A stretch of DNA of 64,000 nucleotides from Styela clava. Its lineage: Eukaryota. Where the stretch lies: contig NC_135263.1 of NCBI RefSeq assembly GCF_964204865.1, positions 10,292,001-10,356,000 of the forward strand. The letters run 5' to 3'. Below the pieces are notes generated by a model. That model saw only the letters and a list, made by a program, of their open reading frames with translations, had not been told where the DNA came from and did no database searches. A program made the position numbers and the translations under genes. Of this stretch, positions 1,530 to 7,618 are shown piece after piece; positions within the stretch are counted from its first letter, which is position 1, and every line of letters begins with the position of its first letter.

Positions 1530-2410
1530 TGCGCCCCTCGTGGGCCAGATCCGGCCCACGAGGTAAAATAATCCGGCCTGCGAGCTGCGACGCTTCACTG
1601 AATTATAGCGACAAAACAGCGGGTTTTGACGATGAATTTATTTTATAATCCACGCTCGAGGAGTTGATTATATTCTTTACCTAACCAAATTTATTGTGAG
1701 ACATGTAGATTAAATTATATTATAACCTAACAATTCAGTGAACAGCTAGCTACTCGTTTAACGAGCCTACAATTTAATTATAATTAGACAAATGGCAATA
1801 CGCAGGAAAGTTGATGCTGAGTGCAGATGGTTCAATGGCGCACAAAATATTCGAATAGAGCTTCTTGAGATGCAATGCATTGAGGAAATAAAATCCCTAT
1901 TCTATTCGAGAGATGTATTACTGCTTGAATCAAAAAAAAAATATCTTCTTGAACGAAATCTCATACAAATGTGACAAACTATGCAAAAAATTCACCTCAA
2001 TATTTTGAAGTACATATGCGTGCGAACAATAATTTTCGAAAATGAACATTATAAAGAACAATCCGCGAACTCGGATTAGGGATGCCTATTAGTGATGCCT
2101 AGAAAATGTTCCAATCTTGGCTTTATCCAGTGTGTCACCTGATGTCGAAAAGCTATCAAGCGTGATGCAACAACATGTGTCACATTAAATTTCATTTGTA
2201 AATTTTTTCCTTCTAGTAGAACGACTAACTTGAGTTCACGAGTGGTCGCAGTCTTCGCGCGATGTTTAAATCTAAAATTTCAACTACTGATCTGTGTGAA
2301 GAAATTGTGATTCATTAGCAATCCGTTCGATTTCTAACTTTCAAAAATATGTGTGGTAACTTGCAACCCTTACCTTTGGCCCGTGAGCGACAAAAGGTTG
2401 CCGATCCCTG
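1530..2410. mobile_element. Degenerate hAT-type non-autonomous element (boundaries approximate)
   Basis: GGGCC..GGCCC-type subterminal palindromes at about 1540-1580 (gtgggccagatccggcccacg) and a hAT-like terminus ggcccgtgagcgacaaaaggttgccgatccctg ending at 2410. The left TIR is not recognisable. Confidence 0.35.
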
Positions 2411-3403
2411 GTTTATATAGAACCGTGATACTGCTACAGAATATGAAATGCAATAATTTTAGCGTTGAAGTCTCACAGCTTAATCGTGATGACGTTATTG
2501 TACTAGGCACCTAAAACTGAAACCATTGTTGAATGTTGGGCCTAACTTCATATTTTGTTTCAAGATCTAAATTTCACTCTGGGGTGCGTATAATATATAA
2601 TACATAACTCGTTTAAATTAACAAATATTGCTTGATCATGAATGAAGTTGATTGGAAGAAAAAAAGCAAAAAATCGCAACATTGGTGAAAGTGGAGTGAT
2701 TTCTCGATAACGTTCTCTCATTGAGCATCAGATCGTAGTGTTACTACTCCTACTGGGGCTTTTATGTTTTTTTTATACAAATATCAGTATATAAAATGCT
2801 ATTTCAGCATACCACTGAATAGTACTGAGGGTGCCGAAATTCCACAACTATATAGCCTACCTGGCAGCTACAGCTGTACTGACAGTTACAAAACACATTA
2901 GTAATGATAACGGTGTTTTTGCTTCTTATGGCTAATTTATGGGCTCATATTTGCTCTATTCTTCCTTCAATATTCAGCTACTGGTTCGCCGGTACAAGTT
3001 TTATCTCACTTAGGGTATTGTTGTAATATTAGTTTGCTTTTGCCATATTGGAAATTCATATATCATAATCTGCATTTAGGCCATACCTAACGACAAATAC
3101 TACAAAAGATTATAATCCAATTTGTTTCGCAATAGCCTGATACTTTTTCCATTGTCCCGAAATCTTCTTGTATTGGCTGACAAAAAAAAAGTTTTCTCTT
3201 TTGCTATCATTGTTATAATATACGAAAATTGTTGTACTGAATGTAATTCAAAAACAGGAACGCCAATTGTGGCTACAGGAAAAGATAGAAATATCCTTTT
3301 ACTAGTTTTTTCCAGATTAGTGCAATATCTTTGAAATAATGCGTTACACAAACGGATGAGAAAAAATTACATTGACATAAAAATTAAGTTATCTTGTAAA
3401 AAC

Positions 3404-6301
3404 TTAGTTTTTCTTTATAAATTTCATCTCTGTAAATTTAAGCGATATAAAGTAGCTACTTTTCCATTGGTACCAAAATGTTCCATGATAGTTTCCCGAA
3501 TAGGACTCCTGCTTATAGTAAATCCCATTCAGATTCGAGTAAGAGCATTGATTGTACCACCAAGCTCCTTGGTTATATTGAGATGCACAATTTTGAGACC
3601 ACGGGTCATGATCAGCATCCTTTGTTGTGAACTGCTGATTGTTGTGCCAAGTTAAAGAATCTCCAGCATTTCCTGAATAACCACTGATAGTAAGTCTGTA
3701 GTTGTCAGAAGCAGGTGCTATACCAAACGTGCTAAAAAAATTATAATTAAACTAGGTGTAGTTTCACGCGGAGACTTGATAAATAGCGTATAGCCTCGAT
3801 TAGGAGATAGTGAGGATTATTTATTTAACGGCGATTTTAACCTTAGAAATTATAAAAAAAAATTCTGTTATTAACAGGCGATGAGAATCTCCAAATATTT
3901 GCATTTTGTGGGTGGGTCAAAAATGTAACAACAAATTCCCAAATTTGTTTGACATGCTACTGGACAACTAGAGTATTGATATTGTCAAAACAATGTATTG
4001 CATCCGTTGTTGATTACTGTCTTTTCAAGAGCATTTCTTCAGATAAATGATTTATTTTGTAAACCACCAGCAATACAACAGCATTTTTCACTTCAGAAAA
4101 AAAAAACATTTAGTGAAATAAAAGGGATTTGTTGAAAGTTGGATATACAGTACATTGGTTCAATACAATTAAACTTGCTGAATTGGTCACCAGCACACAT
4201 AAGGTATAATTGTTGTGGTAGCAAACGTTAAATTTGGAATTCTAATGATCCACCTCGTGTTATTCGAGTATATGTTCAAAGTCACTACATTGAAGCGTTA
4301 TTGACACTATTATCTCGGTAAGTCTTAATTCTTGATCGGAATTAAAGCTTTTTTAATAATCCTATGCAAACTCACAGTCCATCCTTCGCCATCCGCTGTG
4401 AGATCGCAGTAGACTTCTATTTGCTTATTTTTATTTGGAGATATATCAAATACGCCTCCAGTAATTTTCCAAATCTTGGAATTTTTTCTGTCAACATCTT
4501 GGCAGCTCTTAGGATCTGTGAAACAATTTATATCACAACTGTGTAGTCAACTTCAACAATATTATTGCAATATTGTTTATTAAAAAGCAAACACCTCAAA
4601 TGATATAATTCCACGTATCGAGGGTTGACACTTTCGAATACAAAATTTGCAGCACTTACTAAATTTATCGCAATAAACGTAAGTACTCTCAGCAATTGAG
4701 TCTGGCTTGATTAGATAATATCCTGGTATAGGTGACTCTATTTGTTCGCCAATTTCCAAGCATTTGGATACAGCTGTAATGAAACTTTGTAGAATTACTG
4801 CATGGAAGAGGCTAAGTTAAAGCTTAAGAGGGTAAACACAGAAATCAAAACAAAAAGCGTTCCTATACAGTAAACAAGTTTATTTCAACGAAAAAAGTCA
4901 TCAAAAGATCTTTCGCTTCAGATTAAAAAGATTGCTTATTATAATTATTAATAAAGTGATCAAATAATTGAAAATGTTTATCATCACTGGAAGCTATTGT
5001 ATCATGATGACTTTGGAATCATGCCTAGGACAAAATTTACTTTAGGTGTTGTGATGGTTCCCAGTATTGTATTTGTGTGAATATGCGGCGGTGCCTCTGA
5101 AATGGTTTGGCCATGCTACTATGAATCTGTAATGTGAACCAAAAATTTGAAGTTTCTTGAGATTTTTCAGGAAGAAACTAAAAACCAACGTTAAAAGTAT
5201 AGGTGTAATCAAACCTCGAAATTCAAAATCGCAGTATGTATATTCTGGTGTTGCAGAGTCGTTTACTCTAAGCAAGTAATATCCGGAAGATGAAACCTCA
5301 TGAAGATCCATCAAGTCTTTGCAGCTTGTTGCACCTAATCGACAACACGATCCGGTTATCAGCACAGTTTATTTTTTATCCTTTTGAATTCACACAATAT
5401 ATATGGATCGTTCAAAATGAAAAAAATGAATTAGATTTCAGTGTAAAAATGCGAAACTAAATAATTGGTAAGTGAACAACTTGAACACCGTGATATGTTA
5501 GCGGTATCTTAGACGTAGGGAAACATTACGAAAAATTTAATAGGTGACGCTGCTTGCTAGTTTGTCTGCTGCTCACTGGTTTATTGCGTCTCTCATCACA
5601 CTGGAATGCATTTTCATTTTTAAAATTTTTCTCAATCATGTTTTTACAATGTGTACTTTCGGCATGTGAGAATATAAATTACAGACTGACTAATATGTAT
5701 CTGGGATCAAAGGCAAATTCATAGAGCGATAATCGCTTACCCAAAATTCCGAGAATTTTTGTGGTTATTTCTGTTACATTTACACTCGTTCCTTTGACAC
5801 CTTTCAACCCTTGATCGCCCTAGAAAAACATTTGACAGGCTCATTGTTCAGCTTAATTTTAATTTTTTGAGTTTATACTACATACTACGTATACATTGCT
5901 GAATGGACTTGATCAAGTAGTTACTAATTTAAAGAGAAAATATATTTCAGTTAGTCGCGTATAATCAATTATATATCATGAATTAAGTAACGCACAGTTT
6001 CCGTATTGCTATAAATTTTGTTTGCACTGGTTATAACTAGAATAGCTTACTTTTTCTCCTCGTGGTCCAACCGGTCCAGTTAGTCCTATTTGCCCTCGTT
6101 TTCCAGGACTTCCGGGTGGTCCACGAACTGGATCGACAGAACTATCTGCATCACCGGCGAAATTCAAATTTACCACGTTACACGTTTCACCTTTTGTAGA
6201 GGGAATTTGAAAACTTTTGGATATTTGTGCATATCCTTGGTTTCCAATAGCAATGGAAACGATTGCAAAAACGTTGGAAAAATATACGTAGATCGAAACA
6301 T
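3404..6301 (-). pseudogene. Ficolin-like gene (signal peptide + collagen + fibrinogen-related domain), apparently disrupted or mis-assembled
   Basis: Minus-strand exons with GT-AG junctions: about 6301-6051 (hydrophobic leader, GPPGSPGKRGQIGLTGPVGPRGEK); 5819-5741 (GDQGLKGVKGTS...); 5334-5215 (GATSCKDL..SGYYLL..YTYCDF); 4773-4660 (SKCLEI..PGYYLIKP..YVYCDK); 4515-4376 (PKSCQDV..GVFDISP..EVYCDLTADGEGWT); 3731-3404 (TFGIAPASDNYRLTISGYSGNAGDSLTWHNNQQFTTKDADHD..NCA..GAWWYNQCSYSNLNGIY..SLKFTEMKF, TAA). Exons 1-5 splice in phase. The central VxQRR..GFG..EFWLG exon(s) are absent and the nearest ATG (6301) is out of frame. Confidence 0.8.
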
Positions 6302-7618
6302 TCTTCAATCAGAAATGTACTCTTTACTTTATTGGTTAGGCAATACGTGAACTAACTGTGGATTCTCTATGAAAATAATTTGGAACGCGGTTACATTATA
6401 TTTCATATTATCAAGGGTTTATAAATGTGACTCAACATGTTTTTGCCTTCCCTGGATCATATTTACTTATTTTTCCCAAGGATTCGTAGTTTGAGGTTAC
6501 TCTTTAATAAGTACAATATTTTTGAGGATTATGCCCACTTACTAAACTACTGCTGATTGCAAAATTCGTACATCATATTCAGGTCTATCGGATTCTAGAA
6601 CTGAAAATGAGCCATGACTACGTTTAACACATACTCCTCCTTTTTGTCATCTACTACAACAAAAATGATATTGACAGTGTAATATTTCTAAGTAAGCTTA
6701 ACTTTAAACAGATACCAGCTTCGGCTAAAGGTAAGATTTGTCCAGATTTCTATAGCCTATTTGTATATATAAAATATTTTACTGGTCCAGGATATATCAT
6801 CTTTGTTAACTGGACAGCTCTTATTCTCAATCTAGCTTGTCGTAATTGATAGGTTGTTGACAATAAAATGAAGGACCAATCCTAGGGCAAGGTTCTTTAT
6901 ATGTAATATTAAATATGAAATTGAAAGAAAATTAGGATTAATACAGACTGCATTCATTACCTCATTTTGTTGACGGATTCCAGAGATGTTGACTTGACTG
7001 GAACATGTGTCAAAATGTTTTCGACATTGGTTCGTGATTAAGTGTTTTAAGAAAGTCGATATTCATTCGATAAACATGGTAGTTGAACAACATTTAAACT
7101 ATGTCCTGTTCCATTTTGCCTAATATAACATGATAGATATTTGGTGTTAGTTTTTGATTACATTCTGTCAAAGAATTTGATAACATGACTTACGCAATGT
7201 AATTTCGATGAAACTTGCGGAATGAAAGCGCGCTGTTTTGCACATTGCAAATATATATATATAACACGAACTGCTGCAAACATGATAGCCTATCTTGCTA
7301 AGTAACAAGTTTAAAAGATGTTCATTTGTGTGCAGGGCATGGGCCCACATCTTCCAGTTTGATTCTAAGTAAATCACTAACATATATATATATAATACGC
7401 CTAATAGTAGAGATTTGGAGTCAAGGCCATTACAAAAACAACGCGAAACTGCCACAAAATGCGCAGTTTTTAATTTCGATGACGTCATCACAAAAGCAAA
7501 ATTCCTATAGAGCCCCAAAAAATTTTCAAACCAAATAAAAGTAGCCTATTAGCCTTTTATCGACAACAACAATCTTCGACTATGGAAAATTTTAAAACAA
7601 TTGGTCCGGTATAGGAAG

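What the first reader, a model, noticed from the sequence alone, without database searches (positions are those of the whole stretch)
4376..5334. Ficolin with three tandem, exon-encoded copies of the FReD N-terminal subdomain
Seen in sequence: after about 12 Gly-X-Y triplets, three successive exons (120, 114 and 140 nt) each encode the motif [S/K]C-x(10-16)-G[Y/V][Y/F]x[L/I]-x(8-9)-YCD. The first two are symmetric phase-1/phase-1 exons and only the third continues to ..DGEGWT. Established: ficolins have this two-Cys subdomain once, at the start of the fibrinogen domain, where its first Cys pairs with the Cys in YCD. Inference: exon duplication created two extra self-contained disulfide mini-domains between stalk and lectin head. 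They could be skipped in frame to give variable-length or variable-specificity pattern-recognition receptors. I do not recognise this architecture from characterised ficolins.
Basis: partly seen in the sequence, partly recalled or inferred. Interest (0 to 1): 0.8.

Follow-up and report, generated by a model that had tools for sequence, protein, structure and literature searches.

The report
Ficolin-like gene with borrowed neck modules
A sea-squirt (Styela clava) lectin gene has two extra small disulfide modules between its collagen stalk and its fibrinogen-like head; they fold like the first part of that head but come from a different gene family, and RNA from other animals includes both, while the copy in this assembly is broken.

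Summary
On the minus strand, exons 5334-5215, 4773-4660 and 4515-4376 each encode a two-Cys C..G[YV][YF]..YC module after 11 Gly-X-Y triplets. RNA contigs from three studies splice all three into one mRNA.

The extra modules have the FReD N-subdomain fold. The AF2 model has pLDDT 86.7. An all-against-all structure search returned only three chains: fibrinogen beta, procollagen C-propeptide and FGL1.

The extra modules are not copies of this gene's own A exon. They and exon 1 belong to a second Styela clava family with at least 16 loci: collagen stalk, 2-4 tandem modules, then a GON/Caspr-FBG-like head. This gene therefore looks like a head swap by phase-1 exon shuffling, and I found no other such case in this genome or in 1.84 billion representative proteins.

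Tandem free-standing modules are not unique. 62 of the 70 proteins matching the module profile carry two or more.

No exon skipping was seen.

The window copy is defective. It has 2 extra nt in exon 1 and lacks two FReD exons (194 nt) that the transcripts and RefSeq XP_039265755.1 ('ficolin-1-like', 365 aa) contain. Function is untested.

The parts
6051..6368 (-). Exon 1: 5'UTR, ATG at 6301-6299, signal peptide, ISKSFQIPSTKGETCNVV segment, first 8 Gly-X-Y triplets. In the window the ATG is out of frame with the collagen frame because of 2 extra nt in the T run at about 6280-6276.
   Evidence: RNA contig X1 record 2 covers 6368-6050 and leaves out 2 nt at 6277. The loose end of X3 reads ATG..in frame. 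P0071 starts MLRSSDIFNVFAIVSIAIGNQGYAQ. Frames. Homologous to family-X exon 1.
5741..5819 (-). Exon 2: last 3 Gly-X-Y triplets plus the neck TSVNVTEITTKILGIL. Starts in phase 0, ends in phase 1.
   Evidence: Junctions 6050/5818 and 5739/5332 in X1 and X3 contigs, with 1-3 nt of ambiguity. 26/26 residues identical to P0071.
5215..5334 (-). Extra module 1 (120 nt, phase 1/1): ATSCKDLMDLHEVSSSGYYLLRVNDSATPEYTYCDFEFR. This is a family-X m1-type module with the FReD/COLFI N-subdomain fold.
   Evidence: Spliced in X1, X3 and X4. 59 bits to the X_m1 HMM and 3 bits to the FReD_A HMM. AF2 pLDDT 86.7. Foldseek and VIA hits are only FReD/COLFI N-subdomains. 23 paralogous exons in the genome.
4660..4773 (-). 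Extra module 2 (114 nt, phase 1/1): VSKCLEIGEQIESPIPGYYLIKPDSIAESTYVYCDKF. A diverged m1-type module and the most polymorphic exon.
   Evidence: Spliced in X1, X3 and X4. The 3' end differs between alleles (table 5c). 24 bits to the X_m1 HMM and 8 bits to the FReD_A HMM. 30/37 residues identical to P0071. Only weak paralog hits.
4376..4515 (-). The true FReD A-subdomain exon (140 nt, phase 1 to 0), ending ..DGEGWT|GTGAGT.
   Evidence: Pfam PF00147 positions 3-44, E 4.8e-6. 70.5 bits to the FReD_A HMM. 115 paralogous exons. Same donor position as paralogs L011 and L012.
3732..4375 (-). 644-bp interval where FReD exons B1 and B2 (194 nt, 65 residues) should lie. No trace of them here. The sequence is unique in the genome.
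   Evidence: The transcripts carry 192(+2) other letters between 4374 and 3731. P0071 has VFQRR..MWLG and LETIY..YAKYD there. tblastn finds nothing. The best hits for P0071 residues 223-289 anywhere in the genome are paralogs at 57-64%. The interval has a single copy.
3404..3731 (-). Last FReD exon (rest of the B subdomain plus the P subdomain), carrying the KDADHD..NCAS..GAWWYNQC motifs. Stop codon TAA at 3406-3404.
   Evidence: Pfam PF00147 positions 112-219, 90.6 bits. 50-59% identity to many paralogs. Acceptor at 3731 is used in X1, X3 and X4.
3229..3403 (-). 3'UTR (at least to 3229).
   Evidence: X3 record 8 runs to 3229.

Best explanation
This is a Styela clava gene for a secreted, collagen-stalked, ficolin-like lectin. 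RefSeq calls it 'ficolin-1-like' (XP_039265755.1) on the earlier annotation.

Architecture of the product:
- a signal peptide and an N-terminal Cys segment;
- 11 Gly-X-Y triplets;
- a short helical neck;
- two free-standing modules of about 38 residues, each with two conserved Cys that align with the disulfide pair of the FReD A subdomain;
- a complete fibrinogen-related domain (A, B and P subdomains).

The two extra modules have the helix plus beta-hairpin fold that opens FReD, procollagen C-propeptide and GON-type domains. They are not copies of this gene's own A exon. Together with exon 1 they come from a second Styela family, called family X here. That family has a collagen stalk, 2-4 tandem modules and a GON/Caspr-FBG-like head, and NCBI names its members 'contactin-associated protein-like 5' and similar.

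The gene is therefore most simply read as a head swap between two collagenous protein families. All the module exons are phase 1/1, which makes such shuffling frame-safe.

Inferred, not shown: the modules act as a rigid, disulfide-stabilised extension of the neck, and possibly as an extra and polymorphic surface, that spaces the three FReD heads from the stalk.

The copy in this window is a defective allele or a faulty stretch of assembly. It has 2 extra nt early in the ORF, and both middle FReD exons are missing.
For: One mRNA: contigs of 1004 and 1406 nt in runs X1 and X3 join exon 1, exon 2, module 1, module 2, the A exon, 192 further letters and the last exon. X4 confirms module 1 - module 2 - A and the last exon.

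Database protein: P0071 (365 aa) has Collagen at 60-93 and Fibrinogen_C at 189-358 (187.7 bits), and residues 110-188 are unassigned.

Fold of module 1:
- AF2 gives pLDDT 86.7.
- The listed Foldseek hits are nearly all FReD N-subdomains, the rest being procollagen C-propeptides and intelectin-1, for example Ang1 4epu at TMq 0.84 and rmsd 1.0.
- VIA-wide found only 3 of 48,161 chains at Z>=2: fibrinogen beta 208-245 (Z 4.5), procollagen I C-propeptide (Z 3.3) and FGL1 (Z 2.1).

Origin:
- HMM classification places both extra modules with family X.
- hhalign gives 98% to family-X modules and 40% to FReD A exons.
- Exon 1 matches family-X first exons.
- 17 family-X loci were mapped exon by exon. 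Full-length family-X proteins are P0001-P0004, P0008, P0009 and P0012.
- The family-X head resembles GON/COLFI/Caspr clusters (feature score 0.95, TM 0.91-0.94).

Uniqueness:
- All 23 other module hits in the genome lie at family-X loci.
- Among the 70 profile hits in 1.84 billion representatives, only this gene's own cluster joins X-type modules to a FReD.
- The word search with residues 110-192 found nothing.

Defects in the window copy. RefSeq on this very contig predicts only a 133-aa stump that reads into the intron.
Against: - No biochemical or genetic evidence for lectin function, oligomer state or any role of the modules.
- The direction of the swap is not resolved. FReD could have replaced a GON-like head, or the reverse.
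- The Foldseek E-values for the 39-residue model are not significant (0.57 or more), and Pfam does not recognise the modules.
- The RNA runs are labelled RNA only by guess, and they are assembled contigs, so expression level, tissue and minor isoforms are unknown.
- The transcripts differ from the window by 1-6% per exon, so they come from other alleles, or conceivably from a copy that is absent from this assembly.
Confidence: 0.75

Rival explanations
1. One reading: the two extra exons arose by tandem duplication of this gene's own FReD A-subdomain exon.
For: All three exons share the motif and the predicted fold. hhalign of modules against FReD A exons still gives E 2.9e-4 with both Cys aligned.
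Against: Module 1 scores 59 bits to the family-X module HMM and 3 bits to FReD-A. Module 2 scores 24 against 8. The A exon scores 9 against 70.5. Exon 1 is also family-X-like. Exon lengths and phases match family-X module exons rather than the A exon, which ends in phase 0.
Confidence: 0.07
2. The two phase-1/1 module exons are alternatively spliced cassettes that give isoforms with 0, 1 or 2 spacer modules. This could hold in addition to the main explanation.
For: Both exons are symmetric (120 and 114 nt), so skipping keeps the frame. Family-X genes vary from 2 to 4 modules per gene.
Against: Every spliced contig in three runs includes both exons, and no skip junction was reported. Contigs suppress minor isoforms, so the test is weak.
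Confidence: 0.2
3. The two defects of the window copy (2 extra nt in a T run, and loss of exons B1 and B2) are assembly errors, and the sequenced animal has an intact gene.
For: The 2-nt difference sits in a homopolymer. Other individuals and the older RefSeq model are intact. There are no Ns in the window.
Against: The 644-bp interval is clean, unique sequence with canonical splice sites on both sides and no remnant of either exon. Two independent lesions on one haplotype fit a decaying null allele. Run X2 holds an unspliced 268-nt piece 99.6% identical to the window allele but no spliced contig. NCBI's own annotation of this contig also fails to build the full protein.
Confidence: 0.35
4. 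The chimera is a recent evolutionary accident with no selected function, and the modules are inert passengers.
For: A single gene in one species. One allele is already broken. No orthologue was found.
Against: In the window, in P0071 and in the one variant allele I could read from the RNA (X1), the frame and both Cys of module 2 are kept. Expression was found in three studies. Amino-acid differences concentrate in module 2 and the P subdomain rather than being scattered stops.
Confidence: 0.15

Closest known systems
Ficolins: human FCN1-3, and the ascidian Halocynthia roretzi ficolins (Kenjo et al. 2001, cited in PMC11312191)
   Same: Signal peptide, N-terminal Cys segment, short collagen stalk, C-terminal FReD with Ca-site-like DxDxD and NCA..WW..C motifs. 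RefSeq names the protein 'ficolin-1-like'. The stalk has PGKRGQ, close to the O-G-K-x-G-P protease-binding motif of MBL and ficolins. That motif is from my own knowledge and was not tested.
   Different: Two extra free-standing A-type modules (about 78 residues) lie between the neck and the FReD. The N-terminal half is homologous to a non-ficolin family. Orthology to vertebrate ficolins, sugar binding and MASP binding were not tested.
Styela clava 'family X' (e.g. XP_039248885.1 'contactin-associated protein-like 5', and P0001-P0004, P0008, P0009)
   Same: Homologous exon 1 (signal, ..SCNVV.., collagen with PGKxGP), the same neck, the same m1-type phase-1/1 module exons in tandem.
   Different: Family X ends in a third module plus a Cys-rich GON/COLFI/Caspr-FBG-like head (exons Ca and Cb). 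The window gene ends in a canonical FReD and has no Ca or Cb exon anywhere in the window.
Fibrillar procollagen C-propeptide (COLFI, PDB 5k31 and 4ae2) and the GON domain of ADAMTS9/20
   Same: Their N-terminal subdomain has the same fold and C..SG.Y..(V/Y)C motif as the modules.
   Different: In those proteins the subdomain occurs once, as an integral part of a roughly 200-240-residue domain. It is not a repeated stand-alone unit.
Biomphalaria FREPs (IgSF domains plus FBG)
   Same: Invertebrate FReD proteins in which extra N-terminal domains and exon structure diversify a lectin.
   Different: The upstream domains there are immunoglobulin-type and there is no collagen stalk. This is an analogy only.

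Membership tests
Ficolin (collagenous FReD lectin) | Signal peptide and N-terminal Cys-containing segment | tested here: met
   Met in P0071 and in the transcripts: MLRSSDIFNVFAIVSIAIGNQGYAQ..TCNVV. In the window copy the ATG is out of frame by 2 nt.
Ficolin (collagenous FReD lectin) | Collagen-like Gly-X-Y stalk | tested here: met
   11 uninterrupted triplets read directly. Pfam Collagen gives 21-25.7 bits, below the 27.2 cut-off because the stalk is short.
Ficolin (collagenous FReD lectin) | Complete C-terminal fibrinogen-related domain (PF00147) | tested here: met
   For the gene: P0071 scores 187.7 bits over profile positions 2-175, and the window's last exon covers 112-219. For the window copy itself this is NOT met: the two middle exons (about profile positions 45-111) are absent.
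Ficolin (collagenous FReD lectin) | Binding of acetylated sugars and association with MASP proteases | not testable with these tools
   Only motif-level hints (PGKRGQ in the stalk, Ca-site-like DADHD in the P subdomain).
FReD N-terminal (A) subdomain | Two Cys about 30 residues apart flanking a G-aromatic-aromatic strand | tested here: met
   C4 and C34 are invariant or nearly invariant in alignment A1, with G17 and Y19.
FReD N-terminal (A) subdomain | Helix plus two-strand fold superposable on solved FReD structures | tested here: met
   AF2 pLDDT 86.7, H4-11, E17-21, E30-34. Ang1 4epu TMq 0.84 and rmsd 1.0 A. Fibrinogen beta Z 4.5 and rmsd 1.3 over 38 residues. Only 3 chains of 48,161 reach Z>=2, and all are FReD or COLFI.
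FReD N-terminal (A) subdomain | Sequence-profile match to Fibrinogen_C or to this genome's A exons | tested here: inconclusive
   No Pfam hit at E<=10 for either extra exon. hhalign to 21 A exons gives probability 40% and E 2.9e-4. 3-8 bits to the FReD_A HMM.
Styela family X (collagen + tandem modules + GON-like head) | Family-type exon 1 and m1-type modules | tested here: met
   Exon 1 is 34-49% identical to family-X first exons. Modules score 59 and 24 bits. hhalign 98%.
Styela family X (collagen + tandem modules + GON-like head) | C-terminal GON/Caspr-FBG-like head (exons Ca and Cb) | tested here: not met
   No Ca or Cb match in the 64-kb window. The transcripts continue into FReD exons.

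The most novel reading that the evidence does not exclude
The roughly 38-residue N-subdomain shared by FReD, COLFI and GON domains is an autonomous, mobile, exon-sized module that tunicates and other animals use in tandem. In this gene the second module is the most polymorphic exon (7 of 37 residues differ between two assemblies, and further variants appear in RNA). It may be a second, allele-specific recognition surface rather than a passive spacer, and null alleles may segregate in the population as they do for other non-self recognition genes.
Probability: 0.15. Interest if true: 0.7.

Novelty: new variant of a known kind. Interest (0 to 1): 0.45.

Why it matters
It gives a clean, transcript-supported example of domain shuffling inside the collagenous defence-lectin class. 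One stalk-plus-adaptor cassette serves two unrelated heads (FReD and GON-like).

It also shows that the first subdomain of FReD/COLFI/GON domains can exist and multiply as an independent module. Current domain libraries do not model this. Pfam leaves residues 110-188 blank, and NCBI mislabels the sister family as contactin-associated proteins.

For tunicate immunity, it adds an uncharacterised and apparently polymorphic ficolin-like molecule, plus a family of at least 16 genes with a conserved PGKxGP stalk motif, as candidates for lectin-pathway recognition.

For users of this assembly, it flags a locus where the reference copy is truncated.

Tried and rejected
- Pfam on single exons: no hit for the two extra modules or for the family-X head exons.
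- PDB sequence searches with family-X head exons and with a family-X profile: nothing beyond collagen and weak FReD A-region hits.
- Search for exons B1 and B2 or their remnants in the window, with paralog peptides and with P0071: nothing. An apparent 'QQRM / DAIHCFDN' remnant near 4010-3960 that I saw by eye is not supported by any alignment.
- Search for B1 and B2 elsewhere in the genome: only paralogs at 57-64%.
- The 644-bp interval as a repeat or transposon: single copy.
- AF2 of a full-length family-X protein with 6 sequences: pLDDT 42.8, with the head unmodelled. I did not use it for fold search.
- The search for homologous proteins on residues 110-192 of P0071: no hit.
- Literature searches found ascidian ficolins but nothing on this architecture.
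- I did not build, translate or search a joined spliced model of the window's exons. Exons were searched one by one, and full-length comparisons used the database proteins P0071 and P0006 that tools returned.
Full report
**What is in the sequence.**
- The window is AT-rich animal DNA with 29-38% GC.
- It is G000:C18:10292001-10356000 of a 377-Mb genome.
- The genome is Styela clava. A protein encoded here is RefSeq XP_077976299.1, 'uncharacterized protein LOC120341333 [Styela clava]', on a contig of exactly the window's contig length of 20,054,287 bp.
- Reading the minus strand gives a gene whose exon 1 carries a signal-like segment..TKGETCNVV.., and then the Gly-X-Y repeats.
- There are 11 triplets across exons 1 and 2, followed by the neck TSVNVTEITTKILGIL.
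- Each encodes C-x(12-15)-G[YV][YF]x[LI]-x(8-10)-[YV]YC.
- The first two are 120 and 114 nt and phase 1/1. The third ends ..DGEGWT|GTGAGT in phase 0.
- The last exon (3731-3404) is a good FReD C-terminal half: PF00147 positions 112-219, 90.6 bits.
- The third module exon is the FReD start: positions 3-44, 27 bits.
- The two extra exons get no Pfam hit on their own.

**Are the exons used?**
- The one reads call laid four probable RNA runs of organism A on 3200-6500.
- Contigs of 1004 nt (X1) and 1406 nt (X3) join 6368/6280-6050, 5818-5739, 5332-5215, 4773-4679/4666, 4512/4515-4374, 192 further letters, and 3731 onward.
- X4 gives module 1 - module 2 - A, and separately the last exon.
- The runs come from three studies (P1, P2, P3).
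- Both extra exons are therefore spliced into one mRNA that runs from the signal peptide to the FReD stop codon.
- No contig skips either exon. Contigs drop minor forms, so alternative splicing is untested rather than excluded.

**The window copy is broken.**
- Ordinary FReD genes of this genome have four FReD exons: A, B1, B2 and last (loci L011 and L012).
- Here A and the last exon are 644 bp apart and nothing between them resembles B1 or B2.
- A direct A-to-last splice is out of frame.
- The transcripts carry 192(+2) letters at this joint that the window lacks.
- The X4 loose end at 3731 translates ..SGNTVYAKYD|TFG.
- The 90% cluster of the window's protein also holds XP_039265755.1, 'ficolin-1-like [Styela clava]', 365 aa (P0071).
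- P0071 has [33 protein letters not shown] and LETIYQLTKNGNYELRVDLTDWSGNTVYAKYD in exactly this place.
- Searching the whole assembly with P0071 finds no copy of these 65 residues better than paralogs at 57-64%.
- The 644-bp interval is single-copy.
- Second defect: the ATG at 6301-6299 is out of frame with the collagen frame in the window. X1 leaves out 2 nt at 6277, and X3 and P0071 read in frame through a shorter T run.
- RefSeq's model on this contig is accordingly a 133-aa stump that starts inside module 1 and reads into the intron after ..GWT (P0006).
- I could not decide whether these two lesions are a real null allele or assembly faults. I lean toward a real allele, at about 65%.

**What the extra modules are.**
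- Module 1 has 23 paralogous exons in the genome and none lies at a FReD locus. The A exon has 115, all at FReD loci.
- I fetched these loci and mapped them. This showed a second family, 'family X', at 17 loci.
- A family-X gene has a first exon with signal, ..SCNVV.. and collagen carrying PGK[RMK]GP. Then come one to three m1/m2-type modules, a third module m3, and conserved Cys-rich exons Ca and Cb.
- The window's exon 1 is homologous to family-X first exons and not to other FReD genes beyond the collagen repeats.
- HMMs built without the window rows give a clear split:

| Window exon | Family-X m1 HMM (bits) | FReD-A HMM (bits) |
|---|---|---|
| Module 1 | 59 | 3 |
| Module 2 | 24 | 8 |
| A exon | 9 | 70.5 |

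- Profile-profile comparison agrees:

| Comparison | Probability | E-value |
|---|---|---|
| Modules vs family-X m3 | 98% | 2e-13 |
| Modules vs FReD A exons | 40% | 2.9e-4 |
| m3 vs FReD A exons | 74% | 2.8e-5 |

- So the extra modules were not made by duplicating this gene's A exon. They came with the 5' half of a family-X gene.
- Module 2 is a diverged m1-type copy. Family-X genes L001 and L004 also carry extra m1-type copies.

**Fold.**
- AF2 on module 1 with the 29-sequence module alignment gives pLDDT 86.7, with helix 4-11 and strands 17-21 and 30-34.
- The Foldseek hits against the PDB are nearly all FReD structures, aligned at their N-terminal subdomain. Examples are Ang1 4epu (TMq 0.84, rmsd 1.0 A), M- and L-ficolin, tenascin-C, tachylectin 5A and fibrinogen.
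- The remaining listed Foldseek hits are procollagen C-propeptides and intelectin-1. All E-values are 0.57 or higher because the model is only 39 residues.
- The independent all-against-all VIA search returns only three of 48,161 chains at Z>=2:
  - fibrinogen beta 208-245 (Z 4.5, rmsd 1.3, 38 aligned);
  - procollagen I C-propeptide 38-77 (Z 3.3);
  - FGL1 80-117 (Z 2.1).

**How common is the repeat?**
- A profile of the modules searched against 1.84 billion representative proteins finds 70 at E<=1e-3. Of these, 62 have two or more matched stretches, and one 4035-aa protein has 13.
- The top hits are the Styela family-X proteins (P0001-P0004, P0007-P0009, P0011) and a relative from another source (P0012).
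- NCBI names family-X members 'contactin-associated protein-like 5' and 'EGF and laminin G domain-containing protein-like'.
- Pfam sees in them only Collagen and sub-threshold COLFI/GON matches over the modules.
- The ESM Atlas places the family-X head next to GON-domain, COLFI, Caspr-like and neurexin-4-like clusters (feature score 0.95, TM 0.91-0.94).
- My own AF2 model of a full-length member was too poor to use (pLDDT 42.8).
- Other hits show tandem modules in front of other heads (P0013, P0019, P0030).
- Among the 70, only P0060 has complete FReDs, three in tandem with no extra modules. Only the window gene's own cluster joins X-type modules to a FReD.
- The word search with residues 110-192 of P0071 found nothing.
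- The repeat as such is widespread but unnamed. Its combination with a full FReD on a collagen stalk is, as far as these searches reach, a single Styela gene.

**Mechanism.**
- Shown: gene structure, splicing, module fold, homology of the 5' half to family X and of the 3' half to FReD genes, and phase compatibility.
- Inferred: a head swap by exon shuffling between two collagenous families, direction unknown.
- Inferred: a trimeric, collagen-stalked secreted lectin in which two beads extend the neck. Each bead has two conserved Cys that align with the disulfide pair of the FReD A subdomain.
- Comparing the two assemblies, amino-acid differences concentrate in module 2 and the P-subdomain exon:

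| Exon | Identical residues (window vs P0071) |
|---|---|
| Exon 1 | 73/75 |
| Exon 2 | 26/26 |
| Module 1 | 36/39 |
| Module 2 | 30/37 |
| A exon | 44/46 |
| Last (P-subdomain) exon | 51/58 |

- The RNA alleles differ again at the end of module 2 (table 5c).
- This hints that module 2 may be more than a spacer, but the sample is tiny.
- The stalk motif PGKRGQ (PGKxGP in family X) resembles the protease-binding motif of MBL and ficolins. That is from my own knowledge and is a lead only.

**Comparison and novelty.**
- Ascidian ficolins with collagen plus FReD are known (Kenjo et al. 2001, as cited in PMC11312191).
- I found no paper on extra A-type modules or on family X.
- The protein exists in RefSeq only as an automatic model.
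- I rate it a new variant of a known kind, of moderate interest.

- Earlier scan notes named the species, and I confirmed this independently.
- I did not submit a joined spliced model of the window's exons to any tool.

Noticed in passing
Loci L001-L010, L013, L034-L039 (e.g. L005:8473-536 minus strand; G000:C13:20830000-20839999): An uncharacterised Styela family of at least 16 genes: signal, ..SCNVV.., a collagen stalk with conserved PGK[RMK]GP, 2-4 tandem A-type modules, and a Cys-rich head (..YAWWVSRDGEKM.YWGG..YCACGE.. / ..KCNCD.N..DEGYLTDK..LPV..). The ESM Atlas places this head with GON/COLFI/Caspr-FBG-like domains. NCBI names are misleading ('contactin-associated protein-like 5').
   Followed up: partly
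window 4581-4848: Run X2 holds a 268-nt unspliced piece (intron, module-2 exon, intron) with 1 mismatch to the window, at depth 2, and no spliced contig of this gene. An animal with the window-like allele may make little mature mRNA, or the piece may be DNA carry-over.
   Followed up: no
window 5626-5667 (intron 2): A roughly 40-nt piece is present in short contigs of all four RNA runs, with unrelated letters on one or both sides. It may be a dispersed repeat or part of another transcript.
   Followed up: no
window 1765-1875 and L005:3957-4070: An ORF fragment is 68% identical over 38 residues between the window and an intron of a family-X gene on another chromosome. This is probably a shared mobile element.
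   Followed up: no
G000:C19:5.33-6.08 Mb and other arrays: There is a very large FReD repertoire: at least 161 scored matches and 718 candidates. Arrays on C19 have last exons with identical scores at roughly 100-kb spacing, which points to recent segmental duplications.
   Followed up: no
P0005 (4035 aa, database protein): A giant protein with 13 A-type modules, 11 partial Fibrinogen_C matches (profile positions 1-88), COLFI-like stretches and a Laminin_G_3 domain. It is another use of the module as a repeat.
   Followed up: no
window 4660-4680 (end of module 2): At least three allelic endings of module 2 were seen: ..YVYCDKF(N) in the window, ..YIHCNHFC in P0071, and ..YIRCNHFY in the X1 RNA. 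One allele gains a third Cys.
   Followed up: partly
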